DNA of 64,000 nucleotides from Macrostomum lignano. Its lineage: Eukaryota. The notes beneath the pieces are model-generated. The model ran no database searches and was not told the origin of the DNA. It saw nothing but the letters and a program-made list of their open reading frames with translations. Positions within the stretch are counted from its first letter, which is position 1. The number at the start of each line of letters is the position of its first letter. This document shows positions 6,601-64,000 of the stretch, piece by piece. The stretch lies in NCBI GenBank assembly GCA_002269645.1, contig NIVC01002029.1, positions 147,242 to 211,241 of the forward strand. The letters run 5' to 3'. The translations under genes and the position numbers were made by a program.

Positions 6601-6672
6601 GTGGCCGCCCCTGTCTCTTAGGTGGCCGCCCCTGTCTCTTAGGTGGCCGGCCCTCTTAGGTGGCCGGCCCTG
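3646..6672. repeat. 21-bp minisatellite (GTGGCCGGCCCTGTCTCTTAG)n, about 144 copies
   Basis: Near-perfect unit; variants mostly at one codon (GCC/CCC/ACC-type). Produces the spurious 994-aa SLRWPAL ORF. Confidence 0.98.
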
Positions 6673-7415
6673 TCTTTTAAGTGGGTGTCCCCGTAAAATA
6701 GCTACTTTGTTTTATTTACAATTAGAAAGCTCAAAATAGGTGAGATGTTGTGAATTGAGTGCAAAATAATACTGTAAACTTCTTACATCCCGCAAATGCA
6801 TTTTGTAGCGAGAACAAGCCTTCAAAGTGAAATAAGCAAGATCCTGTTATTTCTTTAGCTGCCCATGATTGGAATTTACATGACCGCGCCGAGCACCCGA
6901 TGTGGCGACACCCTCCAACCCTTTGGGAGGCGCTCTCAGCGCTCTCGAGAGTGAGCAGTGCGCGGTCACAATGCTGAGATTGATTGGGTGGGGAGCCACC
7001 TCCCCCGGATCTCCTCAAACTTATCCGAGCCACCACTTCTCCCCTAAACGCCCCGAGAGTTCTTCCCTTCGATCCAGCCAGCACGCCAAGGGTCGGGCAA
7101 GGAGGAGCTCGCGCGATAAAAAATAACCAGTGTGTTCCTTCTTATCCCTTCCTTCGACTTCTCTCTTTTTTGCAGTTTTTTTCTCTATACGACCTCCAGG
7201 AGGAGCAGCCGGGGTTCTCACTGGCGATAATTGAAGAAATGCTGGTTCCCTATAGATAACATAATGCGATAGACAAATTTTGGCGGTTACTTATGAACTG
7301 CAAATGCACCTGGTGGGGTTTTTAATTAAAAAAATGCATAATGGCAACTAATGCTTCGTCAGTCAGCCATTACATTTTTATCGGGTTGGAAAATAATACT
7401 TTCGAGTTGTTCACG

Positions 7416-13300: not shown

Positions 13301-13880
13301 CTCACACTGCATCCAAATCCTATAGGTAAGGATCTCCCACTGCATCCAAATCCCATAGGTGAGGATCTCCCACTGCGTCTAAATCCCATAGGTGCCTCCC
13401 ACTGCATCCAAATCCCATAGGTGAGGATCTCCCACTGCGTCTAAATCCCATAGGTGAGGATCTCCCACTGCGTCCAAATCCCATAGGTGCCTCCCACTGC
13501 ATCCAAATCCCATAGGTGAGGATCTCCCACTGCATCCAAATCCTATAGCTAAGGATCTCACACTGCATCCAAATCCTATAGGCAAGGATCTCACACTGCA
13601 TCCAAATCCCATAGGTAAGGATCTCACACTGCATCCAGATCCCATAGGTAAGGATCTCACACTGCATCCAGATCCCATAGGTAAGGATCTCACACTGCAT
13701 CCAGATCCCATAGGTAAGGATCTCCCACTGCATCCAAATCCCATAGGTAAGGATCTGACACTGCATCCAAATCCCATAAATGAGGATCTCCAACTGCATC
13801 CAAATCCCATAGGTGCCTCCCACTGCATCCAAATCCCATAGGTAAGGATCTCACACTGCATCCAGATCCCATAGATGAGG
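10311..13880. repeat. 33-bp (with 29-bp variant) minisatellite (GGTGAGGATCTCCCACTGCATCCAAATCCCATA)n, about 110 copies
   Basis: Visible unit. ORF ends at 11079/12144, 11174/12239, 11236/12301 and 11628/12693 show a 1065-bp higher-order duplication. Confidence 0.97.
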
Positions 13881-14995
13881 AGCTGACACTGCCTCCAGAT
13901 TCCAAAGGTACCTTTAAGCTACAACATTTCTGAGTATCCAATAAAGTTGAGGATCTCTTCGGATCGGTATCCAGACTCCCAGATCCCATAGGAGTCATTC
14001 AAGATGAAGTGCTTCAGCATTGCTGGCACCAAATGGGCCAGTTGTAAATAGGAAATGGCACAGCCAGCTGTCTCCCATTTCTCACAACGAGAAGAGCCTC
14101 TCACAGGCCAGTTGAAAACCTGAAGAACGGCCTTTAAGATTCATTCAAAGGAAGAAAAACTCTCAGTTGATGTAAAGGCTTTATTGATGAGGGAGAGTAT
14201 GAGCGCAAATCCCTATTGTAGAAAAAAACAAGGGAACACGGCAATACGGGGGATAGCCGGGGCAATTACTCTGCAACTATGAAGTGCAACATCGCTGCCG
14301 AAGTAGAAGCGGGTATTTGTCAAGATGCCAAAAGAATTTCCAGGGCCAAGAATACGGAGAGAAGGCCAACTTTGAGATGGAGAGAGAGAGAGCTGGGAGT
14401 TGCAGAGAAGAGATGGCGGAGGAGGATAGCGAGAATCTTGAAGAATCCAGTTGGACCGGGATGGCGGGCGGGGCAATGACAAATCGGTATATACATGAAC
14501 TATAGGCCCAGCGTTTCTCGATCTATCCTTCTATGCCAGGGGCCTCTGCAAGCAAATTACAGGCGCACAGAGACTAATCTAATGCCGGGCACTCCTTGCC
14601 ATCCCTTCTCATCCCCTCATCCAGTCCGCATACAACAACTTGTTTTGAGCACTCAACCTCGACTGCAGCTCTTCAGCCTAACAAATATATAAAACTTACT
14701 TTTGCTATCCTAAGCTGGATAGAATGAGCGAGTGATGGAGGGCGAGAAGGCAGATAGGGAGAGCTGTCATGTCGAACTGCTGCTGCTGCTTCTGGGGCTT
14801 AAGCAGATTTCTTTGATTGAATATTAGTTTGCGCGCTCTAGAGGGCTGCCAGAGGCGCCAATTCAAATTAATTGGCACCCGAAGGAAGAGCCGCCAAGCA
14901 GATTACGCAGTTTAAGGCTGGGTCAGGCGGCATCTCCGACATATTTTTGACGCAAGAGCTCTCGGGGCATTGGGGCAGGGTAGCGAATGCCATCC

Positions 14996-17900
14996 TAAAT
15001 CAGTCTGCAGATTCCTGACTAAATCAGTCTGCAGATTCCTGACTAGATCAGCCTGCAGATTCCTGACTAGATCAGTCTGCAGATTCCTGACTAGATCAGT
15101 CTGCAGATTCCTGACTAGATCAGTCTGCAGATTCCTGACTAGATCAGCCTGCAGATTCCTGACTAGATCAGTCTGCAGATTCCTGACTAGATCAGCCTGC
15201 AGATTCCTGACTAGATCAGCCTGCAGATTCCTGACTAGATCAGCCTGCAGATTCCTGACTAGATCAGTCTGCAGATTCCTGACTAGATCAGTCTGCAGAT
15301 TCCTGACTAGATCAGCCTGCAGATTCCTGACTAGATCAGCCTGCAGATTCCTGACTAGATCAGCCTGCAGATTCCTGACTAGATCAGCCTGCAGATTCCT
15401 GACTAGATCAGCCTGCAGATTCCTGACTAGATCAGCCTGCAGATTCCTGACTAGATCAGCCTGCAGATTCCTGACTAGATCAGCCTGCAGATTCCTGACT
15501 AGATCAGCCTGCAGATTCCTGACTAGATCAGCCTGCAGATTCCTGACTAGATCAGCCTGCAGATTCCTGACTAGATCAGCCTGCAGATTCCTGACTAGAT
15601 CAGCCTGCAGATTCCTGACTAGATCAGCCTGCAGATTCCTGACTAGATCAGTCTGCAGATTCCTGACTAGATCAGTCTGCAGATTCCTGACTAGATCAGT
15701 CTGCAGATTCCTGACTAGATCAGCCTGCAGATTCCTGACTAGATCAGTCTGCAGATTCCTGACTAGATCAGCCTGCAGATTCCTGACTAGATCAGCCTGC
15801 AGATTCCTGACTAGATCAGCCTGCAGATTCCTGACTAGATCAGCCTGCAGATTCCTGACTAGATCAGTCTGCAGATTCCTGACTAGATCAGCCTGCAGAT
15901 TCCTGACTAGATCAGCCTGCAGATTCCTGACTAGATCAGCCTGCAGATTCCTGACTAGATCAGCCTGCAGATTCCTGACTAGATCAGTCTGCAGATTCCT
16001 GACTAGATCAGCCTGCAGATTCCTGACTAGATCAGCCTGCAGATTCCTGACTAGATCAGCCTGCAGATTCCTGACTAGATCAGCCTGCAGATTCCTGACT
16101 AGATCAGCCTGCAGATTCCTGACTAGATCAGTCTGCAGATTCCTGACTAGATCAGCCTGCAGATTCCTGACTAGATCAGCCTGCAGATTCCTGACTAGAT
16201 CAGCCTGCAGATTCCTGACTAGATCAGTCTGCAGATTCCTGACTAGATCAGTCTGCAGATTCCTGACTAGATCAGTCTGCAGATTCCTGACTAGATCAGC
16301 CTGCAGATTCCTGACTAGATCAGTCTGCAGATTCCTGACTAGATCAGTCTGCAGATTCCTGACTAGATCAGTCTGCAGATTCCTGACTAGATCAGCCTGC
16401 AGATTCCTGACTAGATCAGCCTGCAGATTCCTGACTAGATCAGCCTGCAGATTACTGACTAGATCAGCCTGCAGATTCCTGACTAGATCAGTCTGCAGAT
16501 TCCTGACTAGATCAGCCTGCAGATTCCTGACTAGATCAGTCTGCAGATTCCTGACTAGATCAGCCTGCAGATTCCTGACTAGATCAGTCTGCAGATTCCT
16601 GACTAGATCAGCCTGCAGATTCCTGACTAGATCAGCCTGCAGATTCCTGACTAGATCAGTCTGCAGATTCCTGACTAGATCAGCCTGCAGATTCCTGACT
16701 AGATCAGCCTGCAGATTCCTGACTAGATCAGCCTGCAGATTCCTGACTAGATCAGTCTGCAGATTCCTGACTAGATCAGCCTGCAGATTCCTGACTAGAT
16801 CAGTCTGCAGATTCCTGACTAGATCAGTCTGCAGATTCCTGACTAGATCAGCCTGCAGATTCCTGACTAGATCAGCCTGCAGATTCCTGACTAGATCAGT
16901 CTGCAGATTCCTGACTAGATCAGTCTGCAGATTCCTGACTAGATCAGCCTGCAGATTCCTGACTAGATCAGTCTGCAGATTCCTGACTAGATCAGTCTGC
17001 AGATTCCTGACTAGATCAGCCTGCAGATTCCTGACTAGATCAGCCTGCAGATTCCTGACTAGATCAGTCTGCAGATTCCTGACTAGATCAGCCTGCAGAT
17101 TCCTGACTAGATCAGTCTGCAGATTCCTGACTAGATCAGTCTGCAGATTCCTGACTAGATCAGCCTGCAGATTCCTGACTAGATCAGCCTGCAGATTCCT
17201 GACTAGATCAGCCTGCAGATTCCTGACTAGATCAGCCTGCAGATTCCTGACTAGATCAGTCTGCAGATTCCTGACTAGATCAGCCTGCAGATTCCTGACT
17301 AGATCAGCCTGCAGATTCCTGACTAGATCAGCCTGCAGATTCCTGACTAGATCAGCCTGCAGATTCCTGACTAGATCAGTCTGCAGATTCCTGACTAGAT
17401 CAGCCTGCAGATTCCTGACTAGATCAGCCTGCAGATTCCTGACTAGATCAGCCTGCAGATTCCTGACTAGATCAGCCTGCAGATTCCTGACTAGATCAGT
17501 CTGCAGATTCCTGACTAGATCAGTCTGCAGATTCCTGACTAGATCAGTCTGCAGATTCCTGACTAGATCAGTCTGCAGATTCCTGACTAGATCAGTCTGC
17601 AGATTCCTGACTAGATCAGTCTGCAGATTCCTGACTAGATCAGTCTGCAGATTCCTGACTAGATCAGCCTGCAGATTCCTGACTAGATCAGTCTGCAGAT
17701 TCCTGACTAGATCAGTCTGCAGATTCCTGACTAGATCAGCCTGCAGATTCCTGACTAGATCAGCCTGCAGATTCCTGACTAGATCAGTCTGCAGATTCCT
17801 GACTAGATCAGCCTGCAGATTCCTGACTAGATCAGCTGCAGATTCCTGACTAGATCAGCCTGCAGATTCCTGACTAGATCAGCCTGCAGATTCCTGACTA

Positions 17901-19292
17901 GATCAGCCTGCAGATTCCTGACTAGATCAGCCTGCAGATTCCTGACTAGATCAGTCTGCAGATTCCTGACTAGATCAGCCTGCAGATTCCTGACTAGATC
18001 AGCCTGCAGATTCCTGACTAGATCAGCCTGCAGATTCCTGACTAGATCAGCCTGCAGATTCCTGACTAGATCAGTCTGCAGATTCCTGACTAGATCAGCC
18101 TGCAGATTCCTGACTAGATCAGCCTGCAGATTCCTGACTAGATCAGCCTGCAGATTCCTGACTAGATCAGCCTGCAGATTCCTGACTAGATCAGTCTGCA
18201 GATTCCTGACTAGATCAGTCTGCAGATTCCTGACTAGATCAGTCTGCAGATTCCTGACTAGATCAGTCTGCAGATTCCTGACTAGATCAGTCTGCAGATT
18301 CCTGACTAGATCAGCCTGCAGATTCCTGACTAGATCAGTCTGCAGATTCCTGACTAGATCAGTCTGCAGATTCCTGACTAGATCAGCCTGCAGATTACTG
18401 ACTAGATCAGTCTGCAGATTCCTGACTAGATCAGTCTGCAGATTCCTGACTAGATCAGCCTGCAGATTCCTGACTAGATCAGCCTGCAGATTCCTGACTA
18501 GATCAGCCTGCAGATTCCTGACTAGATCAGCCTGCAGATTCCTGACTAGATCAGTCTGCAGATTCCTGACTAGATCAGTCTGCAGATTACTGACTAGATC
18601 AGTCTGCAGGTTCCTGACTAGATCAGCCTGCAGATTCCTGACTAGATCAGCCTGCAGATTCCTGACTAGATCAGCCTGCAGATTCCTGACTAGATCAGCC
18701 TGCAGATTCCTGACTAGATCAGCCTGCAGATTCCTGACTAGATCAGCCTGCAGATTCCTGACTAGATCAGCCTGCAGATTCCTGACTAGATCAGTCTGCA
18801 GATTCCTGACTAGATCAGCTGCAGATTCCTGACTAGATCAGCCTGCAGATTCCTGACTAGATCAGCCTGCAGATTCCTGACTAGATCAGTCTGCAGATTC
18901 CTGACTAGATCAGCCTGCAGATTCCTGACTAGATCAGCCTGCAGATTCCTGACTAGATCAGCTGCAGATTCCTGACTAGATCAGCCTGCAGATTCCTGAC
19001 TAGATCAGCCTGCAGATTCCTGACTAGATCAGCCTGCAGATTCCTGACTAGATCAGCCTGCAGATTCCTGACTAGATCAGTCTGCAGATTCCTGACTAGA
19101 TCAGCCTGCAGATTCCTGACTAGATCAGCCTGCAGATTCCTGACTAGATCAGCCTGCAGATTCCTGACTAGATCAGCCTGCAGATTCCTGACTAGATCAG
19201 TCTGCAGATTCCTGACTAGATCAGTCTGCAGATTCCTGACTAGATCAGCCTGCAGATTCCTGACTAGATCAGCCTGCAGATTCCTGACTAGA
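14996..19292. repeat. 24-bp minisatellite (GCAGATTCCTGACTAGATCAGYCT)n, about 179 copies
   Basis: 120-bp periodicity equals 5 units; essentially one polymorphic C/T site. Source of the spurious 959-aa RSACRFLT ORF. Confidence 0.98.
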
Positions 19293-19669
19293 TAATCACC
19301 AGAGAATTAAGCACAACACAGCAACTCAACCCGAGTCTATGCGCAAGGCCACTATTATAAATAAATCTGTCTGATATATTAATTAGGTTTCTATCTGTGA
19401 GTGGGTTGGGGCTGGCGGGCCTCGCTTTACTGCCAGAGCATAGCGAATGGATTTGGCCAGATGGAGGATCGATTCTGGGCCGGCGGGAGGCGGGCCGCAA
19501 CCTCCCCCAATTTAATCGATGCTAGTGCATCCTTTTTATCTGTTTGTATCCCCCCAGCTGGTTCGGTGTGCAGCTAAGGTTTATCTTTATATTATTATTA
19601 TTGGATTGCGACACTATCACGGCTTTACGGCAGTTAAACTGCTCACATTTCAAACTGAGATTGAGAGGA

Positions 19670-39283: not shown

Positions 39284-50686
<11,403 letters not shown>

Positions 50687-52714
50687 TTCAGCAACAGTCG
50701 AATCTAGTGTAATATAAACTCAGTTCATTACTGAAAAATAAATTAAGAATAATTCAATATTCCTGAATGGTTATTCAGGAATAATTCAATATTCAAAATC
50801 CTATCTTTCATTAGAGATGAAAAATTATAAACCTATTTAACAATACTTAAAATTATACTATAGTTGATTAATGCTAGGAAATAGCTATAAAGCAATAAAC
50901 TAAACTATGAAACAGACATTTTTGACAATACTACAGGCTTGAATAGATTAAATATTAAAACACGAAATGTATTTTTCTCAAAAGAAAAATTAAATATAAA
51001 GATATGTTTATCAATTTTTATGACTATATTATATAAAGTTTTGGCGTCCTAAAACTAATTTAATCATTACATGCTTGCGACTTTATTGAATTGAAATGAA
51101 TTTTTCAATTTAGCGTAGGTCTTCTAAACGTATCGCAAAAATAGGCGCTAGCGCTAACATGCATACATTCAGCGAGGAGACGACTGATCCAAGGGGTCCA
51201 GACCCACGGCGGATGGCATGCATTTAAGCGAAAATCAACTTTTTGGTGTCTCAAATCAAAAGGACTAAGAAATATGAATCCTGTTTCATTTTTCATACAA
51301 ACACTATAATACAAGAACTGAATGGCTGCAGTGCGAAAGACAGTGAGTAATGATAAATATAGAAAAAGACAGGCATTAAAATCATCCGATTTGACACATA
51401 CTTTCGTATTATTTGATATGATAAGTGATAACTAACTGGTAAAATAATCATTATTTCAATAGCACATTTAAATCTGAAAACTGAGGTTTGCGCGTGTGGA
51501 GACAATATAAAATTAAATATTAATGCTTTCATTTTCAGTCGCAACCATTCAACGATTTTCAATTGCATTCTCATTTGTGAGTTTTTATCCAAAATAAAAT
51601 ATATTTAGTAAAAATAGCTTACAGTAAAAGACTTTGTTAAAACAGGAAAACGTAAAACGCGCAATTCAAGCTGCAGTAAGGCTTGAGCAACCTTGAAACT
51701 TTCTTCTGCCGGCAATGGCGGAAGCAGCCTCAGATCGAGAATAAAGAATAGTAGATCGTGACAGAATCGACTGTATTATCCGATTTGATGTATTTCAGTG
51801 GGACTAAATACATATAATGCTCAGTCAGTCTCCTGTTGAAGTGCGATGAAGTGCGAGAGATAGACTGACTGACAAAACGCTTCGTGATTTACAAATGTAT
51901 ATATGTATATGAAGTAGAAGGATGCAGATCATGCTGCAGGCACTCGATGTTCTTAGAAATAAGCTGGAGGACGGATTTATTGCTAGTGCAATTATGCTCT
52001 CGAGAAATCTATTTTTTCTAGCGCGGATTTTTCTAGGCTATGAGAAATCGTAGGCTCGTAAACCTCATTCAGAGTTATACATGTATATGCGTTGTCTAGC
52101 TAGAGCATACTTCCGTACGAGACTGAAATGCACTGCGCACTGACCGACGACTTAATTTCTTAAAAAATCGAGTTCTGTGGCGTAAATTCTACGTACTAAA
52201 TTTTTACTCGTCTTCATTAAATAACCATGTTAAGATTCAATTAACCTGCTCTGCTAAGTGTAGTATACTGTATATATGAAATTACAATTAACCTTTCAGA
52301 CTTATAATGCACCATGTTCTACACAGAAACCCATGGTTCCTTCTGATTGATTTTGGAATAGCGAAAATTGACCCTTTAAAAGCTCACTGACCCCAACAAG
52401 TTTACTTGTAACATCTACATGTAGCAATTAATAGCTCGTACTATGTACATCGTACATGTAAATGCCAAAATAATAAAACATAGAAGCTGTTTTAGAGTTT
52501 AATAATTTGAACTACTTCAGATTCTCAACATACATTTCATTAAAATATTAAGCTTATAGTAGCTCCAGTAATATTTATTAATTATTTAAGCAAATAAAGA
52601 AGACTCGCTACAAGAGAAAAAAGGATTGAAGAACTATTGCAGTATAGCATATTTCAGCCTGACATTGATAGCCTAAGTTATTGAAGGTTCGCGTAGTTTG
52701 AGATCGAGAGCGCA

Positions 52715-54808
52715 TCAAACTTGAATCATCATCCGAAACTCTTTCAAGGCCCTGAAGCCTTCTACAAAATACCACACAGCATAAGAAGCGGTTGTTGTTT
52801 GGCCGTAGTAGTAGTTACCATTGGGATTCGCATAGCTGCAGCTGCTATATTTATGCCACCAGCCACCGTAGCCGCCCCAATTAACAGAACAGTGCGATGC
52901 AGAGTAGCCATCGTTATCAACATCGCGGGTTGAAAACTTCTGACCTCTCGAGAGTTGCAGAGCGTCAAAGACCAAGCTTGATTTCGCTCTGACCATCGAT
53001 CCGTACGACATCGTGTAGCTGGTGCTGGCGGGGCCAACAACGAAGTTCGAATATTCGGCGAACCATTCAGTGTTATTCCAAAGAAGAATTTCTACTCGCA
53101 ACGCTGCACTTCGAGAACTCGTCAGCCTGTGCATGGTGTCCAAACCTACAAAAAGTCAAATACACAAAATAACATGAATCAGGCCTAAATTGTTTCCTCG
53201 TTTAATAGCTATGCAAAATAAAAGTTACCAATCCAAAAGTTGATGTCGTCACCGAATCCAGCCACATATTCCCGCCAGTATCGTTGAAACTGGCTGGTTC
53301 GACAGTTTCGTTGAACCACGACTAAGAAACTTCTGTCGTCTCTGGTGACAGTTTTATTACTAAGAGCTTCCAGGTTCGATAAAGCAGCACGAACTGCCTG
53401 GCTGTTGACTGACATCCTGTCTTTCATTCTGAAAGCAAAGCGGCTCTGACTGGTGCGATATTCGCACTCGTCTTTGAGCGAAAACGAGCCGGACCATCGA
53501 ATGCCCTTCCAGAAGTTGACCGGCTCAGACTGAAGAATGGAGCTGAAAAACCAATCTAATTGTACAGTCACCGAATTAAAGTTAAGGTACTTCTAAAAAT
53601 AACTCTTACATAAGCAAATCACACGATTCCAAAGCCCTACAGTAAGCTCTCAGCTCCGCAGTCCGCCGGTCAACAGACAGTCTCAACGCCTCGAACCGCC
53701 ACTGAGACAGCCTGCTGCTCACGTGGATGCTCGCGTGCCACAGCTTCATGAACTCCAGCGACTCGACTGACGCAGACCCGATCCGAGACCTCACCGCCGC
53801 GATCACGGACTCGTCTTCGATCAGAGCGGGCAGCCTCACATAGTGGCTACCGAGTGAGAAGTCTCTGAGCAGCTGGAAGCTCGGAGTCGGACACAGCAAC
53901 GGTTCGATCACAAAGTGGCCTCTCTTGCCTCGTCTCTGGTGCACGTAGGCAGTGCAGTTGTCCAGCTGAACCACTCTGAACAGCTGGAGATCGGAGCAGG
54001 CTGGCAGAGCAGAGCTCCTGGGTCTCTGCAGCGACTCGATTGGGAGGAACGGAGCGCGAGCGACGGTGACCGGGAAGGCGCGCTCGAAGGAGGCGCAGCC
54101 CTCGCCAGCTCGCATGCTGGCCACGAGGCGGATGTTGTCGAATGGCTCCAAGCGGTCTCTCTCGAGGTTCATCCTGAACGACATTCGAACGATAACTTGA
54201 ATTTGGCTTTCTACGAGCTAAATAGCATTCACCCTTAACTGTTATTCCATGCAAAATTATGAAACATACGCGAGGGACGGACACGCGAATTCGGCGCACA
54301 TCAGCCGCAGGTGTCCAATGAACTCCGTCGGACCCCACAGAAATGAGGCCTTCCTGAACGCGAGGCTGGTCGATCCGTTTATCCGGACGCTCGTCACCTC
54401 CAAAAAAGACACCGACTTTGGCGACAGGTGGCTCAGCATCGACGCCGCGTCGGTCGCCAGAGTCTCGTCGGTCACGTTGACGGGGAAGCTGAAGTAGAAC
54501 TCGTTGGTCAGCAGGTCGAAGTGGGCGCCGGGACTGCGCAGAGCGGCCGGCTCCGTGATGCAGAAGGTCGGCTCGAGCACGAAGCGACCGGCCTTGACGG
54601 CGCCCAGACGGTGCACGAAGACGGGGCAGCCGCGGATCGACAGGCTGGTAACGAAGGACATGGAAGGCAGCGAGCCGTTGCTGCAGGCGAACTCTATGCG
54701 TTGGGCCGGAGCTGGCAACGAGTCGGCCGCGTCCTGCTCCGACGGGACTGCCGAAGCGCCGAGGCTGCAGAGCAGCAGCAGCTGAAGAAACTCTTGCAAA
54801 TGACGCAT
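52715..54808 (-). CDS. Secreted fibrinogen-related-domain (FReD) protein, copy 1; 4 exons, about 615 aa
   Basis: Exons 54808-54270, 54173-53610, 53542-53229, 53145-52715 (phases 2,2,1; 1848 nt). Signal peptide; FBG motifs VVQR..FQRYWREYVAGFG..FWIG|LD, FSTRDVDND..C..GGWW..C..ANPNG, FRMMI. Confidence 0.9.
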
Positions 54809-55781
54809 TATGCTCTTCCGAGTGGATAATGAAAAAACCCGGCGGTAAAGTTAGTTAATAAATTAACAGCATTAAATTGTCTTTCAAACAAGCCCAGTGT
54901 GTTGCAGTCAACTGGTTTTGCATCGCGCGACTCTTCTGTGCTGATGCTATCGGAGTGGCAGTCTGCAGAATTCACCTTTGACTCTGTGCGGTCTGGTAGA
55001 CAGCATCAGATAACAGCCCGTGTGTGGGACAGAAGTTTGTTCGAGTTCTCCGTAGTAAGTGCAATGATAACGGATCTCGTGACTTGACATTGCACCCATA
55101 AAATTTGCACCAAGACACGTTTGCGATTTAAGCATGCACCGGAAATATACAGGCAGTTAGTCAAGGTGGTCTGGATTCTAAACAAATCTAGAAAAGCATA
55201 GTTTACGAGTAAACAGTTTATGCATAAACATTGTTAAGTTTACATAGCAGTCATATCTAGCTTTTCTGGTATTTTTCTCTCATGATTCCACAAGAATTAA
55301 GCTAATGCATAGGACAGTAATTTATATTATCACTTGGTAATTATTGGAGCAGTTTTCAGAATATTTGAGCGAGTGTTTAAAAATACCTTTGATAAGTGAA
55401 TTTTGATGAGCATACGAGTAAATATTTGCAAGAGGGCTGCAATGCAGAGGGCTGAACCCTGGTGCAACGCTTTCGGCGACATGGTGTCAAAACCAGCGCT
55501 GAGGCAGACACTCGTACACACGCTCACACAGGGTGTACAGCGGCCCTGACCTTCGAATCGGCAGGCATGTACATTGTCTGTGCCTTGGAGGTTGGCCCTC
55601 GTAGGTGTGAATCGCCCGCCTCCCCGCCCCAAATGAATGCGGCCGCGCATAGAATCGAACAGGCGTCGTAGCGCGAGTCAGACAGGCACGTTTACCGCTG
55701 GGCTGCTCTGCACTCTCAATTTCGATCGAAAACTTCTTTAGGCTTTGTGGCACAATCTGTTGCAATCAGATTCCGCAAGAA

Positions 55782-56063
55782 CATACTCAGAAACATCGAA
55801 CAGTCGCGCCATCACAGAAGATTCCGTCTGTGGTTGTCACTTTTGAGAGTGCAGGTAAAGTCTCTCAATCTTTGCGAGTGACGCAACTTTGCTACGCCAC
55901 GGCAGACTTTGGTTGAGGAATGAAGTAGGGGGGGGGGCGGTGTGGGAGGGTTGGACGGATTAAAGCTGCCCCGATCAGTTTTCTCGGATCTCTTATTCCA
56001 AAATAGTCCAAGAGAAATTGCTCACTGTTGCATGGAGTGGCGACTTTTCAATGTTGCTGAGTA
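55782..56063. repeat. ~280-bp dispersed repeat, copy A (between FReD copies 2 and 1)
   Basis: Aligns in the same orientation with 61033-61298; shared GCCATCACAGAAGATTCCGTCTGTGGTTG and GGCGACTTTTCAATGTTGCT. Confidence 0.85.
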
Positions 56064-56528
56064 TAATTAAATAAGAAAGGATTTAAGAAATGAATACTTG
56101 GATTCTTGGAAAGATAGGTCATTTTTTACTTCGAGCTGCTCTTCTTTTAAACTGAGTACAACAGACTGCAGCTGCTCACGAAAGTTGCCAGTGTGATGTA
56201 ACTGACTTTCTACAAGCACTTAGCATCCGATCATTAACCCGTTCATGAACCAACGAATAATCAATACGAAGCAAATAATCAGATTTATAAAACTCATGCA
56301 CAGAAGACTAAAAAAGTTCTTTTTCGTAGAAACAGAAGGATCAAGAAAATGTTTGAAGCAACAAAAAAAACTGAGCTATGAGGCTAGTTTGCTTGCATTG
56401 TCTCCATTAATTATTATTGTTATTAGCGTGCAGGAACACGAGAGCTTATATAAATTCAATTTTGGTGCAACGAAGATTGAGTACCCGAATGTTACCAACA
56501 TCAATTGCTGTCTAAATAAACTGTCTTT

Positions 56529-58774
56529 TCATATCTGCACCATCATTCTAAACTCTTTAGCAGCTTTGTAGCTTTCTTTAAATTGCCAACCGGATATCGT
56601 TGTGGCTCTCGAGTCACCGTAGTTATAGACGCCGTTCGGGTTGGTGTGTCCGCAGGCTGCGTACCACCAGCCGCCGTAGCCGCCCCATTTTTTTGAGCAG
56701 TAGTTAGCAGTTGAATGGCCGTCGTTGTCTCGGTCTCGCGTGGAGAACTTGGTGCCGTTTGAAGACGCCAGGGCGTCATACACGAGGCTGGACTGCTCCC
56801 GAAGCATGCTGCTGTACTTCATTGTGTACAGCCTCGCCGCGTTGCCAACAGAGAAGCCGGAGTACTCAGCAAACCACTCGGTGTCATTCCATAGCAGCAT
56901 CTCAACACGCATTCGAACGCTCTGCGGACTTGTGAGCCAATGCAGAGTTTCCAAACCTGTAACAGATCAACAATAGGTTGCTGCAGTGTAGTACCATGTA
57001 CTCGTAATGCTGACTGTCTAGTACAAAGAAACCTTAACTAAGAGGCTACCATTTTCGAGCCTTCAGAATATCCGAAAAGTATAACAAGTCCATCCTTGTA
57101 GTTAACTAATTAAGCTCGTAACTACGGCAACTAAGTCTGTGCAGTAGTAACGGTGTTCATCTATTGTCAAGACGGCAGCCTTACCTATCCAAAAGTTGTG
57201 CTCGTCACCAAAGCCAGACACATATTCACTCCAGAAGCGGTTGAAATTGCTGCTTCTGCAACCACGCTGAAGCACAATAACGAAATGGCGATTGTTTCGC
57301 ACGACCGTCTTGTTCCTCAGACTATCAACTTTCTGGCCAATTGCAGTTGACACTTGGCCTTCACCGCCAGACCGTTCCTTCATCCTAAAAACAAACCGAA
57401 GCTTTTCGGATCGGAGTTCGCAGTTGTCTTCCAACAAAAATGTCGCAGTCCACTGGACGTTTTTCCAGAAGTTCACTGGCTCTGATTTAAAAATGGATCT
57501 GAAACAAATGAGAAAGTTTTTTCTGCATCTATTAGATGGAAAAAATCGTAAAAAACCTGATTCAGCAGCCAAACATACACTAGCAACTCGCATGACTTTC
57601 GCGTATTGCAGTAAGCTCTCAGCTCTGCAGTCCGCCGGTCAACAGACAGTCTCAACGCCTCGAACCGCCACTGAGACAGCCTGCTGCTCACGTGGATGCT
57701 CGCGTGCCACAGCTTCATGAACTCCAGCGACTCGACTGACGCAGACCCGATCCGAGACCTCACCGCCGCGATCACGGACTCGTCTTCGATCAGAGCGGGC
57801 AGCCTCACATAGTGGCTACCGAGTGAGAAGTCTCTGAGCAGCTGGAAGCTCGGAGTCGGACACAGCAACGGTTCGATCACAAAGTGTCCTCTCTTGCCTC
57901 GTCTCTGGTGCACGTAGGCAGTGCAGTTGTCCAGATGAACCACTCTGAACAGCTGGAGATCGGAGCAGGCTGGCAGAGCAGAGCTCCTGGGTCTCTGCAG
58001 TGACTCGATTGGGAGGAACGGAGCGCGAGCGACGGTGACCGGGAAGGCGCGCTCGAAGGCGGCGCAGCCCTCGCCAGCTCGCATGCTGGCCACGAGACGG
58101 ATGTTGTCGAATGGCTCCAAGCGGTCTCTCTCGAGGTTCATCCTGAACGACATTCGAACGACAACTTGAATTTGGCTTTCTACGAGCTAAATAGCATTTA
58201 CCCTTAACTAATATTTCACACACAATTATGAAACATACGCGAGGGACGGACACGCGAATTCGGCGCACATCAGCCGCAGGTGTCCAATGAACTCCGTCGG
58301 ACCCCACAGAAATGAGGCCTTCGTGAACGCGAGGCTGTTCGAGCTGTTCATCCGAACGCTCGTCACCTCCAGAAACGACACCGACTTTGGCGACAGGTGG
58401 CTCAGCATCGACGCCGCCTCGGTCGCCAGAGTCTCGTCGGTCACGTTGACGGGGAAGCTGAAGTAGAACTCGTTGGTCAGCAGGTCGAAGTGGGCGCCGG
58501 GACTGCGCAGAGCGGCCGGCTCCGTGATGCAGAAGGTCGGCTCGAGCACGAAGCGACCGGCCTTGACGGCGCCCAGACGGTGCACGAAGACGGGACAGCC
58601 GCGGATCGACAGGCTAGTAACGAAGGACATGGAAGGCAGCGAGCCGTTGCTGCAGGCGAACTCGATGCGTTGGGCCGGAGCTGGCAGCGAGTCGGCCGCG
58701 TCCTGCTCCGACGGGACTGCCGAAGCGCCGAGGCTGCAGAGCAGCAGCAGCTGAAGAAACTCCTGCAGACGCAT
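56529..58774 (-). CDS. Secreted FReD protein, copy 2; 4 exons, about 613 aa
   Basis: Exons 58774-58239, 58142-57579, 57498-57185, 56956-56529 (phases 2,2,1; 1842 nt). Same architecture as copy 1. Confidence 0.9.
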
Positions 58775-60485
58775 TTAGTTTTCTTGCGCAATAATATCTG
58801 AATTAGTCTTGATTCAGATAGTGTCGCAGAACAGTGAACTTAAATTTGTCTGAACGAAACCTTTAATTTACTTTTCATCACTTACCCTCGAAACGATTCT
58901 GTTTCTTGCAAGAAGCATCGCTGCTGCAAATTGTGGCCCAATCCTGCGGCTGATTGGCACCATCAGATTGGTATTGTAAAATGTAAACAACACGTTTGTC
59001 ATCGTGTGTAGGCTGTGACTTCAGGGCCCCACAGCTGCGATAGAAGCAGGAGGATAAGAGAGTTCTGATAATTACAGAAGTTTTCTTCATTTTCGTTTGC
59101 CTGTCTGCAGATTAAAATATCTCTGCACTGTAATTGCTAATTCACGTGCTTTAAGTGCTGTCAGAAGAGCAATATGAAGGCCAACGAACAGGCGAGAAAA
59201 GTAAAAGCAGACCAAATCACTGCTAATAAGCTTGTAAGTTTCTAAGTGCCAAAGTACTTACCCCTTTGTAGTAGGAAGTTTCTGTGGCACGTGACACGGT
59301 GAAATTTAGACAGGTGATTATTAGCTCCTATGCTTTCGGCTTGTTAGCCTGAGGCAAGTGTCTGAAGCATGTATGAAGCAAGCAAGAACGTGCTTGTCTG
59401 GGGTGCAGTCACACGAATTTTTAAGTGCTTCGAAAATATTAGCTTTTTGCATGGCGCTGAATGGAGTTTTCGCCATGGACGAATTCGGTCGAGAATAATT
59501 CGTCCATAAAAATACACTAAAGAGACAGGAACTTGCTTTATGGCTGGTCTTCGTTAGAATTTCAGGAAAAATAGCTTCATAAACTCGTGGGTACGACTCG
59601 GTAAAAACGCATGTTTACTTCGTTTGCAATTCAGAAGGAATTCAGTGCTGAAAAACTGGAAACTTCTCATCTTGCTAAAGCATATCGAAGCGAAATCCTC
59701 ATGATTTTGCGACTGCAACATCCTGCTTTAGATATCCATGCGTGATGATGCCCACTCTCTATCTATCCCGGTCTAAGAGTAGCCAATTACGAGCTATAGT
59801 CTATGGCCAAACCATCTTTAGCACCAATGACTGGCATGGGTTGGCTCTTGACTTTGGATACGCTGTTTTGCATGAGAAGCATGCAGGCATGGAGGGAGCC
59901 GTACCTAGTCGTCCAGCGAGGCGCTCTTATGTGCCAGCGGCCCAAGCTCGATTCCAATTGAAAATCACAACAATTCGGGGTTAAATTTGAATCTCGGCTT
60001 GGCTCTGCTCGTGCAATTAACGCCCGAGGGCCATTGAGGGCCAACACCCAAGACTGTGAAGTGTACATGCTTACGTATCCGCACCTTATGTGCCTGCTCA
60101 GGGGAGTCGGCGGAACGGGCAGTGATGCCGCTCCCCAGTTGAGTAACAATTTCGCTTGAAGTACCCCTACCTCTAATAAATAATCAGGCATAGAGGCTCC
60201 AGTTGATTTTTAAGGGTAAAATCTTTTTTCAAATCGTAAGAACAAAAGTACATACAGTACTAATAGAAGGCTATGAATATTAAATATTCGACGTGAAAAA
60301 TCATCTATTAATTAGCAAGGTTAAGGGTCATAGGATTAATTTTATTGCTGACAGCAATCATAACGTTATTATAACAAAAAAGTATGAGCATTTCGGCACT
60401 GTTTCTTAGAAAACATTTCACTCGAGCTTTGTGATCTGAAGTTGAGTGGACAAAGCAATCTTAAGCTTCAATCTTTAGCTTTTAA

Positions 60486-62944
60486 CTATATCTGAACCAT
60501 CATGCGAAACTCCTTCAGAGTTCTATAGCCCTCCTTGAAACTCCAAGTTGAGTAACCGGTGCTTGTTGACTGGGCGAAGTGATAAATCCCGTTCGGGTTG
60601 GCGTGACCGCAGTTGCTGTACCACCATCCACCGTTGCCGCCCCATGAACGTGAGCAATAGTGGCGCGAAGAATAACCATGGTTATCCTTATCCCTAGCGG
60701 AGAAGGGAGAGCCTTTAACCGAGCTGAGCGCATCAAAGACTAAGCTGGACCTCGACGGGATCATCTGCAAGTACCGCATGCGGTAATTGTTGCTGGCATT
60801 GTCAACGGAGAATCCAGAGTACTCGGCGAACCACTCGGTCTCGTTCCAGAGCAGCAGCTCCACCCGCATGAGGGTGCCCTGCCGGCCGGTCAGGCTGTGA
60901 AGAATGTCCAGGCCTGGAATTGGCGCAGATTAAATTCTGCACACTTTAGTCATGGAATTCTGCGGTTTGACCCGAGGTCTGGGACTCTGGTTGCTGGATT
61001 CACACAGCTAGAGCCAACCCACAAAGCGGCATATACTCAGCAACATCGAAAGTCGCCATCACAGAAGATTCCGTCTGTGGTTGCCACTTTTGAGAGTGCA
61101 AGTACAGTCTCTCAATCTTTGCGAGTGACGCAGCTTAGCTACGCCGAGGCAGACTTGAGTTGAGAAATGAAGTGGGGGGAGCGGTGTGCGAGGATTGGAC
61201 TGATTAAAGCCACCCCGATCAGTTTTCTCAATTTCAGAATAGTCCAAGAGAAACTGCTCACTGGCATATAGAATGGCGACTTTTCAATGTTGCTAAGTAA
61301 TACACTACCTTCCACCGACCTAAAACACCTGAAAATCAAAAACCATGCCATCACCTATCCAAAAATTGCTCTCATCGCCAAAGCCAGCCACGTATTCCCG
61401 CCAGGTGCGCTGAAAATTGCTGGCCCTGCAGCCGCGCTGGTTAATAATGATGAAAGTGCGCCCGTCCCGCCAGACGGTGCGGTCTCGCAGATCCTGCGCA
61501 TTCCATCGGCCGTCATTTCGCCGTGTCTTCAGCGCTGGGCCTCCCGGCGGTCGGTCTCGCATGCGCAGTGCGAATCGGCGCTGCTGGGTGCGGAAATAGC
61601 ACTGGTCGTCCAGCAAGGAGACTGCGGTCCACTGAATGTTTTTCCAGAAGTTCACCGGCTCAGAGATCAGCACGAGGCTACAATAGGAGTTTGCTGCTTG
61701 ACTTCTTAAAATTTAGCTAATCAAAGAACAGTCTAAAAGCAAAGGAGCACTAAAGTTAGACCCACCCAAGTGCATCGCAAGATGATTGAGTACTGCAGTA
61801 AGCTCTCAGCTCCGCAGTCCGCCGGTCAACAGACAGTCTCAACGCCTCGAACCGCCACTGAGACAGCCTGCTGCTCACGTGGATGCTCGCGTGCCACAGC
61901 TTCATGAACTCCAGCGACTCGACTGACGCAGACCCGATCCGAGACCTCACCGCCGCGATCACGGACTCGTCTTCGATCAGAGCGGGCAGCCTCACATAGT
62001 GGCTACCGAGTGAGAAGTCTCTGAGCAGCTGGAAGCTCGAGTCGGGCACAGCAACGGTTCGATCACAAAGTGGCCTCTCTTGCCTCGTCTCTGGTGCACG
62101 TAGGCAGTGCAGTTGTCCAGCTGAACCACTCTGAACAGCTGGAGATCGGAGCAGGCTGGCAGAGCAGAGCTCCTGGGTCTCTGCAGCGACTCGATTGGGA
62201 GGAACGGAGCGCGAGCGACGGTGACCGGGAAGGCGCGCTCGAAGGCGGCGCAGCCCTCGCCAGCTCGCATGCTGGCCACGAGGCGGATGTTGTGGAACAC
62301 TTCCGTCTGTCCTTTTGCCAGGTAAAGCCTAAACATTAAGTACAGTACGGTGTTAAACAATCCAAAAAGCATCTACTGAATCACTTTAAAACTGAAGATC
62401 ACCACCTGTATATTTACTTTAGAGATTGGCAGACAAGCCCAGAACACACCAGCCGCAGGTGTCCAATGAACTCCGTCGGACCCCACAAAATGAGGCCTTC
62501 GTGAACGCGAGGCTGTTCGAGCTGTTCATCCGAACGCTCGTCACCTCCAGAAACGACACCGACTTTGGCGACAGGTGGCTCAGCATCGACGCCGCCTCGG
62601 TCGCCAGAGTCTCGTCGGTCACGTTGACGGGGAAGCTGAAGTAGAACTCGTTGGTCAGCAGGTCGAAGTGGGCGCCGGGACTGCGCAGAGCGGCCGGCTC
62701 CGTGATGCAGAAGGTCGGCTCGAGCACGAAGCGACCGGCCTTGACGGCGCCCAGACGGTGCACGAAGACGGGCAGCCGCGGATCGACAGGCTGGTAACGA
62801 AGGACATGGAAGGCAGCGAGCCGTTGCTGCAGGCGAAGATGTCTTCTGTCAGTAGATTGGACACATTCAGAAGCTGTTTGGCTGAGGACCCTTGGCACAG
62901 TCCACGCTGCACAAAAGCAGCATTAGAAATAATTTGAAGTGCAT
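60486..62944 (-). pseudogene. FReD copy 3: same 4-exon structure with four 1-bp deletions (pseudogene or read error)
   Basis: Exons 62944-62418, 62328-61766, 61677-61355, 60913-60486. Own signal peptide MHFKLFLMLLLCSVDCAK. Single-base losses near 62890 (inferred from the frame shift), 62770, 62488 and 62040 (seen against copies 1/2). Exons 3-4 are intact. Confidence 0.75.
61033..61298. repeat. ~270-bp dispersed repeat, copy B (intron 3 of FReD copy 3)
   Basis: See copy A at 55782-56063. Confidence 0.85.
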
Positions 62945-63691
62945 CGTCAATTCCGTTAGAGAAACCCAATGATAACCGAAGTCTTTGGTTGCGAACGATG
63001 TCTTATAGTCTCCCCGGTGTCCAGGCCTCGCTGGATACTGAATTATCTGCCATGGCATCTACGGTGTATGCTTTTGTTTATGCGGTCTTGTCAGAAATTT
63101 CGTCAGACGGAGAGAGTTCGTTATTTCACTTAGACAAACTCGACTTTAGGGATGCAGGTATACGCGGCCTACTAACGAGTAGTAAGAAATGAATGAGTAA
63201 CGACCTAACAGTGCGGGCAAAAATATTACGCAGTGATCGTTAATCTTTGAATGTGGGCTCATGGTTTACGTCCTAGCAGCCCAGCGGTTAAAGCCAACTG
63301 AAAAAGAGCAAGAGTCCCGTTATTGTTGGACACACATGTAGGCTATAGAAAAAAAGCTCTGAAACTTGATGGAACGCTAGTTTTTTTAACTAGTCCCAGA
63401 ACAATTGAGACTTTCTGAAAAAACAAGACAGTAACACAGCAAATAAGGTTTTATTTCAAATTTAATACACTTGTTTCGACACACAAAAATGCGTACAATT
63501 AATTGTATTTGACGTATCTGAAGAGAAGTTCAAAGAAGCAAAGAAACTACCGAAGCAAAAAACAAAGGAAAGAGACAACCAAAATCGCGGAGACATGTTC
63601 GACTACAACATATGAGAAGTTAATAAAAAATGATTCTGGATAAAAACAGTTCGTCACAGCTTCATCAGTTCTTAACCAACAAGAATCGGCC

Positions 63692-63989
63692 TCATTGAAC
63701 CGCAGTCTGACCGAATCGAGCCAGCCGCCTCTGCCGCAGCTCCTCATCCGACACCGCCGTTGCCGAATTCGAACGCCGAGTTGGCGGCGGCGGAGGCGGC
63801 GGCTCGTCCTGGAAGCTCCGGTCGGCTCGTCGCTCCTCGCGACTGCTGCTGCCACCGGCCCAGCCCAGCCCCAGGGCCGATAAAACCGAGTCCGATTGCC
63901 GCCAAGAATGCCCAGACAGAGCGGCTCCATGATGAGCCGGAGGGGGCCCTTGACGTAGGCCAGGCCAACCAGAATGCCGGCGAGGTGGC
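63692..63989 (-). CDS. RHBDD1: Last exon of an RHBDD1/RHBDL4-like rhomboid protease (gene continues beyond the window); one apparent frameshift
   Basis: Acceptor TTTTAG|GC gives GHLAGILVGLAYVKGPLRLIME (catalytic His helix). A second frame ends SDEELRQRRLARF, the VBM-like RHBDD1 tail. The two frames need a 1-nt correction near 63860-63880. Confidence 0.7.
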
Positions 63990-64000
63990 CTAAAAGTCAC

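What the first reader, a model, noticed from the sequence alone, without database searches (positions are those of the whole stretch)
52715..62944. Tandem FReD cluster with a homogenised 'constant' N-terminus and highly divergent fibrinogen 'variable' domains
Seen: copies 1 and 2 are about 97-99% identical, including synonymous sites and most of intron 1, from the ATG region to the codons for LRAYC. Identity then collapses; the last (FBG) exons are only about 55-60% identical in protein, with most change in the C-terminal P-subdomain region. Copy 3 shares only two tracts (about 62836-62451, FACS...HLRL, and about 62290-61793, NIRL...LRAYC). Its signal peptide, exon 1 end, intron 1 and exon 2 start are divergent. 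Within the tracts it switches between copy-1 and copy-2 alleles (exon 1: copy-1 type then copy-2 type TEAA/MNSSNS; exon 2: A of copy 2, Q of copy 1). Established: FBG P-domains bind ligands in ficolins, tachylectins and snail FREPs. Inference: old paralogues with diversified recognition heads whose stalks are kept uniform by recurrent gene conversion, perhaps for hetero-oligomer assembly; a constant/variable recognition (or adhesion) system with an architecture I do not recognise.
Basis: partly seen in the sequence, partly recalled or inferred. Interest (0 to 1): 0.82.

Follow-up and report, generated by a model that had tools for sequence, protein, structure and literature searches.

The report
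Flatworm lectin genes with copied front halves
Three neighbouring lectin-like genes of the flatworm Macrostomum lignano have old, very different sugar-binding ends, but front halves made almost identical by recent DNA copying between the genes; this process is well known, and here it acts on a protein module found so far only in this worm genus.

Summary
The window is the last 64 kb of Macrostomum lignano contig NIVC01002029.1. It carries three tandem minus-strand genes, c1 to c3, each of four exons. Each encodes a signal peptide, two copies of an undescribed ~138-aa domain, and a fibrinogen-related (FBG) head.

- **Identity pattern.** c1 and c2 differ at 29 of 1160 bases from the ATG to the LRAYC codons, intron 1 included. 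They differ at 51% of positions elsewhere (Fisher p 5e-182). c3 shares two tracts with them.
- **Age contrast.** Synonymous divergence is 0.01-0.06 in the tracts and saturated in the FBG exons. GC3 is raised in the tracts.
- **Generality.** A second paralogue pair on other contigs shows the same mosaic.
- **Best explanation.** Interlocus gene conversion is the best explanation. Nothing shows that uniformity is selected; the constant/variable or hetero-oligomer idea is untested.

- c3 is frame-broken four times in this window. This is probably consensus error at the contig end, because the sister contig has c3 intact.
- Divergence is not concentrated in the P subdomain.
- Allele "switching" among three copies is weak evidence of mosaicism.

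The N-terminal domain is confined to Macrostomum, has no Pfam or PDB match, and also carries C-type lectin heads. Interest is moderate.

The parts
52715..54808 (-). Gene c1 (615 aa, intact here). Exons 54808-54270, 54173-53610, 53542-53229, 53145-52715. Signal peptide, D-domain 1 (about 54682-54270), spacer, D-domain 2 (about 54010-53610), spacer, FBG.
   Evidence: GT-AG model translated without stops. Pfam Fibrinogen_C E=7.9e-29 at aa 436-613. P0002 is 100% identical over aa 200-615. Domain limits from the HMM.
56529..58774 (-). Gene c2 (613 aa, intact). Exons 58774-58239, 58142-57579, 57498-57185, 56956-56529.
   Evidence: Same coordinates as the 613-aa GenBank gene in L002. Pfam Fibrinogen_C E=1.6e-30. 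The model's FBG part matches ANGPTL2 and ficolins at E about 1e-9.
60486..62944 (-). Gene c3. Exons 62944-62418, 62328-61766, 61677-61355, 60913-60486. The frame is broken in this window by 1-bp deletions near 62904, 62773, 62488 and 62041. It is intact (615 aa) in sister contig NIVC01000142.1.
53639..54798 (-). Homogenised tract in c1: start codon region, exon 1, intron 1 and exon 2 up to the LRAYC codons. Its partner in c2 is 57608-58767.
   Evidence: 29 mismatches in 1160 columns against 51% outside, Fisher p 5e-182. dS 0.04-0.06.
57608..58767 (-). Homogenised tract in c2, the partner of 53639-54798.
62451..62837 (-). c3 tract A (FACS...HLRL, the core of D-domain 1). It is c2-like at 10 consecutive c1/c2-variable sites (62596-62501).
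   Evidence: (D3, D5). dS to c2 is 0.010.
61796..62294 (-). c3 tract B (NIRL...LRAYC: spacer hairpin plus D-domain 2).
   Evidence: (D1, D2). dS 0.016-0.024.
62295..62450 (-). Unconverted island in c3: the C-x5-C helix segment at the end of exon 1, intron 1, and the start of exon 2.
   Evidence: pS 0.95 and pN 0.38 to c1 and c2. GC3 is 0.52 here against 0.83 in c1/c2.
54354..54449 (-). Patch of c1-private changes inside the tract (INGSTSLAFR against MNSSNSLAFT): 9-10 differences in about 100 bp.
   Evidence: Clustering p = 0.001 for exonic sites.
52715..53638 (-). Diverged 3' part of c1: C-x5-C segment, spacer 2 and FBG exons. The equivalent parts are c2 56529-57607 and c3 60486-61795.
   Evidence: pS 0.72-0.85 and dN 0.35-0.40. 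Protein identity 0.41-0.64 by sub-region.
59780..64000 (.). Terminal 4.2 kb of the contig, with an excess of 1-bp deletions relative to the sister contig. It includes c3 and the last exon of a rhomboid gene.
   Evidence: Window position 64000 is the contig end. There are 65 differing columns, nearly all here, with about 14 deletion events against 1 insertion. The rhomboid frame is broken near 63867.

Best explanation
The region is a three-gene tandem cluster in Macrostomum lignano. It encodes secreted fibrinogen-related-domain (FReD) proteins, each with a signal peptide, two copies of a lineage-specific ~138-aa domain separated by short spacers, and a C-terminal FBG head.

The three genes come from an old local triplication, and their FBG exons, introns 2-3 and flanks have diverged to saturation.

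At least three recent non-reciprocal exchanges (interlocus gene conversion) then copied the N-terminal part between the genes:
- one tract of about 1.16 kb between c1 and c2;
- two shorter tracts into or out of c3.

The tracts stop where the partners are already too different to pair, or where converted variants are removed by selection. In both domain repeats this point is the end of the last strand, just before the C-x5-C helix.

By homology the heads are probably calcium-dependent binders of acetylated or carbohydrate ligands, with different specificities. The N-terminal repeats are probably a presentation or spacer scaffold.

Shown: the sequence pattern, the age contrast, the family distribution and the FBG fold. 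Inferred: the conversion mechanism, the ligand-binding function and the scaffold role.
For: 1. Sharp identity steps: 2.5% mismatch inside the tract against 51% outside, p 5e-182.
2. Synonymous divergence is 0.01-0.06 in the tracts and saturated in FBG. Intron 1 is shared by c1 and c2 only.
3. Different segments give different nearest neighbours. c1 and c2 pair in the signal peptide, junction and intron 1. c2 and c3 pair in tract A.
4. GC3 is 0.75-0.88 in the tracts, 0.55-0.70 in FBG, and 0.52-0.57 in the unconverted c3 segments. This is the signature expected of GC-biased conversion.
5. Across the family the N-terminal part normally diverges faster than FBG (0.20-0.39 against 0.29-0.43 identity). 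Constraint alone therefore cannot give 98% identity.
6. A second pair, P0027 and P0016 on different contigs, shows the same mosaic. pS is 0-0.18 in the domain cores and 0.5-0.7 in the junction, with a drop right after domain 2. GC3 tracks identity.
7. The two contig versions of c3 differ at 2 of 7 substitutions exactly where c1 and c2 differ, and carry the paralogue alleles (p = 0.008).
8. The three-gene arrangement and the c3 tracts are present in a second contig.
9. The FBG identity rests on Pfam, PDB sequence matches to tenascin-R and ficolin-1 at E about 1e-20, and fold matches.
Against: - No outgroup species was available. It is therefore not shown that the N-termini group by paralogue within a species while the FBGs group by orthology.
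- The assembly was polished with Pilon using Illumina and RNA-seq reads (PMC5730564). Such polishing can move single-base variants between 99%-identical tracts, so the fine-scale allele patterns and exact difference counts are uncertain.
- The c3 version in the window sits at a low-quality contig end, so item 7 above could be read mixing.
- With three sequences, most allele sharing is equally explained by private mutations.
- The number and direction of the events are not resolved.
- No expression or binding data were accessible.
Confidence: 0.8

Rival explanations
1. Selected constant/variable system. Uniform N-terminal domains are maintained by selection because paralogues with different FBG heads must co-assemble (hetero-oligomers) or dock to one common partner. 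Conversion is the means and not just a by-product.
For: - The boundaries fall at the same structural position in both repeats and in two independent paralogue pairs.
- The same domain carries two kinds of lectin head, FBG and C-type lectin, which suggests a generic scaffold.
- The few differences inside the tracts are mainly synonymous between c1 and c2, with omega 0.13-0.34.
Against: - There is no evidence for oligomerisation. No coiled coil or collagen-like segment is present.
- c3 keeps a fully diverged junction.
- c1 keeps a private patch inside the tract.
- c3 in the sister contig has mostly non-synonymous private changes in tract A (Nd 9 against Sd 1).
- In the second pair conversion also touches FBG.
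- The pattern is expected without such selection (PMC3924837).
Confidence: 0.13
2. Assembly or polishing artefact. The near-identical tracts would come from collapsed or cross-corrected paralogues or haplotypes in a difficult neopolyploid genome.
For: - Mlig_3_7 has only about 64% error-free bases by REAPR and was Pilon-polished. The DV1 line carries duplicated chromosomes (PMC5730564).
- One-base errors are evident in this very locus.
- The annotation models are chimeric across copies.
Against: - The tracts are 0.4-1.2 kb long inside 4-kb units, each flanked by unique sequence. They are far shorter than PacBio reads.
- Polishing cannot turn about 50% divergence into 98% identity.
- c3 shows the same two tracts in a second contig that differs from the window by 1.5% there.
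- An unrelated pair on two further contigs shows the same pattern.
- GC3 and codon structure are coherent across the boundaries.
Confidence: 0.04
3. Nucleotide-level purifying selection on an overlapping element (antisense gene, RNA structure or regulatory DNA) keeps the tracts identical without any exchange.
For: Long antisense ORFs exist in the GC-rich tracts.
Against: - There is no Rfam match.
- The antisense ORFs are what GC-rich coding DNA gives by chance.
- Such selection would not explain the shared intron 1 in only two copies, the differing nearest neighbours, or the GC3 shift.
- The same domains are only 20-39% identical elsewhere in the family.
Confidence: 0.02

Closest known systems
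Partial concerted evolution of tandem paralogues by interlocus gene conversion (human red/green opsins, RHD/RHCE, protocadherin clusters)
   Same: Divergence between the duplicates is very low in some parts of the gene and high in others, with sharp steps. Conversion continues where the copies still pair, and diverged or selected segments stay distinct (review PMC3924837; it cites Innan 2003, Noonan 2004 and Teshima & Innan 2008).
   Different: Here the diverged part is a whole ligand-binding domain plus its introns, at saturation, rather than a few sites. The converted part is a lineage-specific repeat. Selection on the diverged part is not demonstrated.
Snail FREPs (Biomphalaria glabrata: IgSF + FBG) and other invertebrate FReD expansions
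   Same: They are secreted proteins with a C-terminal FBG head behind N-terminal non-FBG domains, in a multigene family, and gene conversion is discussed as a force acting on the family (PMC7588048 and PMC3313920, listed).
   Different: There is no IgSF domain here (no Pfam hit; the Foldseek matches to Fab chains are noise at E >= 0.08 and TM about 0.2). In FREPs conversion is invoked to diversify; here it homogenises. No somatic variation is in evidence.
Vertebrate ficolins and collectins
   Same: One stalk type carries either an FBG head (ficolin) or a C-type lectin head (collectin). In Macrostomum the D-domain repeat likewise precedes either FBG (x1-2) or Lectin_C (x6). The FBG head is closest in sequence and fold to tenascin, ficolin and angiopoietin-like heads. 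The ficolin/collectin comparison rests on general knowledge.
   Different: The stalk is not collagen-like. No MASP-binding motif or trimerising neck can be pointed to. The canonical FBG A subdomain is not matched: the Pfam match starts at profile position 39.
Tachylectin 5A (horseshoe crab)
   Same: It is an FBG-only lectin fold with a Ca site and an acetyl-group pocket. It is matched at E 2e-12 in sequence and 1e-8 in fold.
   Different: It has no N-terminal repeat domains. The residues after the conserved second Cys differ between the copies here (C-S-Y in c1, C-G-H in c2 and c3, against C-H in tenascin-R). Acetyl binding is therefore not assured.

Membership tests
Fibrinogen-related domain (FReD, Pfam PF00147) | Significant match to the Fibrinogen_C profile above the gathering score | tested here: met
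   c1 101.5 bits, c2 107.1 bits, c3 (sister contig) 105.3 bits, against a cut-off of 22.
Fibrinogen-related domain (FReD, Pfam PF00147) | FBG fold | tested here: met
   The c2 model matches ANGPTL2, M- and L-ficolin, tenascin, FIBCD1 and TL5A at E 6e-10 to 1e-8 with target TM about 0.6. The P-subdomain part of the model has low confidence (pLDDT < 50 at 544-600).
Fibrinogen-related domain (FReD, Pfam PF00147) | Canonical A subdomain at the start of the domain | tested here: not met
   The profile match begins at position 39-43 of 221. The preceding segment resembles the family's own inter-domain spacer.
Fibrinogen-related domain (FReD, Pfam PF00147) | Ca-binding D-x-D-x-D loop and the Cys pair of the P subdomain | tested here: inconclusive
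   Read from the alignment: c1 has DVDNDG, c2 has DRDNDG, and c3 has DKDNHG, with the third Asp replaced. The Cys pair is present in all three.
Ficolin | Collagen-like Gly-X-Y region N-terminal to FBG | tested here: not met
   There is no collagen hit in Pfam at E <= 1 and no Gly-X-Y run in the sequences.
Snail-type FREP | One or two IgSF domains N-terminal to FBG | tested here: not met
   No Ig-family Pfam hit. The domain model has no significant PDB match.
Interlocus gene conversion / concerted evolution | Paralogue identity tracts with sharp limits that include synonymous and intronic sites, flanked by old divergence | tested here: met
Interlocus gene conversion / concerted evolution | Incongruent relationships between segments | tested here: met
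   c1 and c2 are nearest in the signal peptide, junction and intron 1. c2 and c3 are nearest in tract A.
Interlocus gene conversion / concerted evolution | Paralogues within a species more alike than orthologues between species, in the tracts only | not testable with these tools
   No other Macrostomum genome is reachable. The collections on hand hold bacteria, archaea, viruses and metagenomes.
Interlocus gene conversion / concerted evolution | Polymorphism shared between paralogues | tested here: inconclusive
   2 of 7 substitutions between the two c3 versions sit at c1/c2-variable sites (p 0.008). One version comes from an error-rich contig end.
Shared-exon constant/variable clusters (protocadherin, UGT1A type) | One set of constant exons spliced to alternative variable exons | tested here: not met
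   Each gene has its own copy of every exon and its own start and stop. The chimeric GenBank models are most simply mapping artefacts in identical tracts. RNA data were not available.

The most novel reading that the evidence does not exclude
The D-domain repeat may be a genuinely new fold that serves as a common 'constant' scaffold. On this reading, selection keeps the three paralogues' scaffolds identical so that heads of different specificity co-assemble into mixed lectin complexes. Alternatively, read-through transcription and splicing between the genes (c2 exon 1 joined to c1 exon 2, as in GenBank model P0001) could combine them. This would be a flatworm-specific analogue of the collectin/ficolin stalk-and-head design, with conversion-maintained uniformity.
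Probability: 0.12. Interest if true: 0.75.

Novelty: new variant of a known kind. Interest (0 to 1): 0.45.

Why it matters
- **A clean example.** The cluster shows domain-limited concerted evolution: a conversion limit that coincides with a protein-domain limit, a more than 40-fold contrast in synonymous divergence within single genes, and a GC3 shift that tracks conversion.
- **A new module.** It exposes a Macrostomum-restricted protein module with a confident predicted structure and no Pfam, PDB-sequence or PDB-fold match. The module is used as the pre-head part of both FBG and C-type lectin proteins. This gives a starting point for flatworm pattern-recognition or adhesion biology, in a model animal where knock-down and transgenesis exist.
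- **A practical warning.** The identical tracts have already produced chimeric gene models. Together with 1-bp errors, they make copies look like pseudogenes in the public assembly.

None of this overturns current understanding.

Tried and rejected
- **Word-indexed protein searches.** The search with c1 returned only 4 proteins, and the search with an N-terminal family profile returned 5. The exhaustive search was needed to see the family.
- **Fold and sequence searches for the D-domain.** Foldseek against PDB and BFVD, and a profile search of PDB sequences, gave nothing significant. One Medusavirus protein (E 0.054, TMq 0.43) was not pursued.
- **Rfam** scan of 50000-64000: no hit.
- **Literature.** No paper mentions the locus tags. 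No paper links M. lignano with fibrinogen-related proteins in substance.
The spliced c1 and the sister-contig c3 could not be given to the structure tool.
- **c3 as a pseudogene: rejected.** The sister contig is intact. The neighbouring rhomboid gene is also frame-broken in the same 4.2-kb contig end, with about 14 deletion events against 1 insertion.
- **Unequal crossing-over as the sole mechanism: rejected.** It changes copy number and would not leave three full genes with different tract sets.
- **Recent whole-gene duplication followed by fast FBG evolution: rejected.** Synonymous sites, introns 2-3 and flanks are saturated.
- **Site-model tests of positive selection on FBG: not attempted.** Three sequences with saturated dS cannot support them. 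The crude dN/dS of about 0.1-0.16 is unreliable.

Full report
**Origin of the window.** A protein search with the c1 product returned only Macrostomum lignano proteins at 99-100% identity. Exact look-ups placed them on two contigs of assembly GCA_002269645.1 (Mlig_3_7). The reverse complement of the window equals locus L002 base for base. The window is therefore the last 64 kb of NIVC01002029.1, and window position 64000 is the contig end. A sister contig, NIVC01000142.1 (L001), carries the same locus in its interior. Mlig_3_7 is a Canu assembly of PacBio reads polished with Pilon using Illumina and RNA-seq reads. It comes from the DV1 line, which carries extra large chromosomes. The assembly holds 180 Mb of duplicated blocks at 95% identity or more, and only about 64% of its bases are error-free by REAPR (PMC5730564).

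**Anatomy.** Three genes lie head to tail on the minus strand, in the order c3, c2, c1 along the direction of transcription. Each has four exons with GT-AG introns of 67-441 bp. c1 (54808-52715) encodes 615 aa. c2 (58774-56529) encodes 613 aa, and its coordinates are identical to a GenBank model. A tblastn search of the whole window finds no further copy. In the sister contig a rhomboid gene lies upstream of c3, so the cluster has three members. Pfam recognises only Fibrinogen_C, at aa 436-613, from profile position 39 onward. Nothing is found in the first 400 residues even at E <= 1.

- Sliding identity and maximum chi-square place a low-divergence segment between c1 and c2 at 54798-53639 / 58767-57608. 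It has 29 mismatches in 1160 columns, against 51% mismatch elsewhere in the gene (Fisher p 5e-182). The longest identical run is 260 bp, which none of 2000 shuffles reach.
- The segment includes intron 1, with 8 differences in 96 bp. Introns 2 and 3, the 5' flank from about 20 bp upstream of the ATG, and the 3' flank are unalignable.
- c3 shares two tracts, 62837-62451 and 62294-61796. Its signal peptide, the end of exon 1, intron 1 and the start of exon 2 are at noise level.
- All three copies lose identity at the same point, the Cys codon of LRAYC.
- Nei-Gojobori estimates give dS 0.01-0.06 in the tracts. In the FBG exons pS is 0.72-0.85 (saturated) and dN is 0.35-0.40. In the c3 junction pS is 0.95.

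**Corrections to the observation.**
1. c3 is not an open gene in this window. One-base deletions near 62904, 62773, 62488 and 62041 break the frame.
   - The sister contig has an intact 615-aa c3 with a normal signal peptide.
   - The window and L001 are identical from 59780 down to 50794, except for one base. They differ by 1.5% plus indels from 59780 to the contig end, and there the window carries about 14 deletion events against 1 insertion.
   - The last exon of the neighbouring rhomboid gene is also frame-broken in the window and intact in L001.
   - Conversely, L001 has a one-base deletion in c1 exon 4 that the window lacks.
   - I conclude that these are most probably consensus errors at a poorly covered contig end, and that all three genes are intact in the animal.
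2. Divergence is not concentrated in the P subdomain. The most diverged stretch is the segment right after domain 2 (0.41-0.47 identity). The B-like part is 0.61-0.64 and the P-like part 0.55-0.59.
3. With only three sequences, a site where c3 agrees with c1 against c2 can simply be a private change in c2. What does carry weight is the following:
   - The c1-private differences are clustered, with 9 in 100 bp (p 0.001 for exonic sites).
   - 2 of the 7 substitutions between the two contig versions of c3 fall on the 2% of sites where c1 and c2 differ, and they carry the paralogue alleles (p 0.008). The caveat is the contig-end quality.

**What the N-terminal part is.**
- Exon 1 and exon 2 each encode one copy of the same domain (25% identity, E 3e-8).
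- An exhaustive HMMER scan of 1.84 billion representative proteins found only 12 clusters. Every named member is from M. lignano. The rest are one run-assembly contig and short metagenome contigs.
- An iterated domain HMM shows a ~138-aa unit. It is present once or twice before FBG heads and six times before C-type lectin heads (P0005, P0007, P0018, P0019).
- AlphaFold2 on a 17-row alignment of units gives pLDDT above 90 for the core. The core is a mixed beta/alpha domain ending in a strand, followed by a C-x5-C helix and a small hairpin spacer.
- Foldseek finds nothing significant in PDB or BFVD, and a profile search finds nothing in PDB sequences.
- The C-terminal part is a normal FBG fold by sequence (tenascin-R and ficolin-1, E about 1e-20) and by structure (ANGPTL2 and ficolins, E about 1e-9).

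**Mechanism.** Interlocus gene conversion is the best explanation.
- Besides the dS contrast and the shared intron, different segments have different nearest neighbours.
- GC3 is 0.75-0.88 in the tracts, 0.55-0.70 in FBG, and 0.52-0.57 in the c3 segments that escaped. This is as expected from GC-biased conversion.
- Constraint cannot explain the identity. Across the family the N-terminal part is less conserved than FBG (0.20-0.39 against 0.29-0.43).
- The three FBGs are each other's nearest relatives (0.54-0.56), so the cluster is an old local triplication.
- The phenomenon is not unique to this locus. P0027 and P0016, on two other contigs, show domain-1 and domain-2 cores at 95-100% nucleotide identity (pS 0-0.18), a junction at about 40% (pS 0.5-0.7), a drop immediately after domain 2, and two short high-identity patches inside FBG. 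GC3 again follows identity.
- At least three events are needed in the window: the long c1-c2 tract, c3 tract A (c2-like), and c3 tract B.

**Why the limits sit where they do** is inferred, not shown. In both repeats and both pairs, identity ends at the last strand of the domain, just before the C-x5-C helix. That segment is the fastest-diverging part of the proteins. Once diverged, such a segment blocks pairing, which makes the limit self-reinforcing. Alternatively, converted variants of heads and junctions are removed by selection. Both outcomes are described for other duplicated genes (PMC3924837). The data do not show that uniformity itself is favoured.

**Rivals.**
- An assembly artefact is unlikely. 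The tracts are much shorter than the reads and flanked by unique sequence. Polishing cannot erase 50% divergence. c3 shows the tracts in two contigs that differ there. An unrelated pair also shows them.
- Nucleotide-level selection on an overlapping element has no support (no Rfam hit), and it would not explain the intron, the incongruence or the GC3 shift.
- The adaptive constant-scaffold reading stays open at low probability.

**Comparison with known systems.**
- The evolutionary process is the known partial concerted evolution seen in opsins, RHD/RHCE and protocadherin clusters.
- The proteins are FReDs but not ficolins (no collagen) and not snail-type FREPs (no IgSF).
- The use of one pre-head module for both FBG and C-type lectin heads resembles the collectin/ficolin pair in design only.
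- They are not a shared-exon constant/variable cluster. The chimeric GenBank models (P0001: c2 exon 1 plus c1 exons 2-4; P0002: c3 exon 2 into c1) are most simply mapping artefacts caused by the identical tracts.

**Verdict.** This is a real and well-delimited case of domain-limited gene conversion in a lineage-specific lectin-like family. It includes an undescribed domain. It is a new variant of known kinds, of moderate interest.

Noticed in passing
window 591-30000: This stretch is almost continuous minisatellite arrays with periods of 13-52 bp. Examples are 3648-6684 (21 bp x145), 10312-13910 (33 bp x111) and 14995-19293 (24 bp x179). They explain the odd composition blocks.
   Followed up: no
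window about 42715-50707 (minus strand): The gene next to c1 encodes a product of more than 1827 aa with WD40/beta-propeller hits. Its copy on the sister contig has weak NACHT and AAA_16 hits. A STAND-type NACHT-WD40 gene therefore lies beside the lectin cluster.
   Followed up: no
window 47931-48510 and 49259-49813: There is an (AGAC)n microsatellite of 145 copies and a 22-bp array of 25 copies just downstream of c1. The array region is only 84-93% identical to the sister contig, while the genes next to it are 100% identical.
   Followed up: no
window 55783-56065 and 61033-61299: A 283-bp element in the c1-c2 spacer recurs at 85% identity inside intron 3 of c3. It is absent from the other family loci fetched. 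It is probably a small mobile or relic repeat.
   Followed up: partly
window 63685-64000: The last exon of a rhomboid gene is frame-broken by a 1-bp deletion near 63867 and lacks 6 bases near 63853, relative to the sister contig.
   Followed up: yes
L001 about 15741 (= window 53033): The sister contig has its own 1-bp deletion in c1 exon 4. This produces the frameshifted tail of GenBank protein P0001.
   Followed up: yes
L001 10001-16012; L002 1731-11286: Two GenBank gene models are chimeric across copies. P0001 joins c2 exon 1 to c1 exons 2-4. P0002 starts in c3 exon 2 and continues in c1. Whether any such transcript is real was not testable.
   Followed up: partly
window 59780 (transition point): The window and the sister contig are identical for 9 kb (c1 and c2) and then 1.5% different from 59780 to the contig end. 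This is either a haplotype or homeologue switch, or the onset of poor consensus.
   Followed up: partly
c3 exon 4, window about 60690: The calcium-loop motif is DKDNHG in c3, against DVDNDG in c1 and DRDNDG in c2. The two residues after the second conserved Cys also differ (S-Y in c1, G-H in c2 and c3). The heads may differ in ligand or calcium use.
   Followed up: no
L004 1755-2162: An isolated FBG-like exon (about 66% identical to P0016 and P0027) lies 8 kb upstream of the P0016 gene. It may be a gene fragment or an unannotated family member.
   Followed up: no
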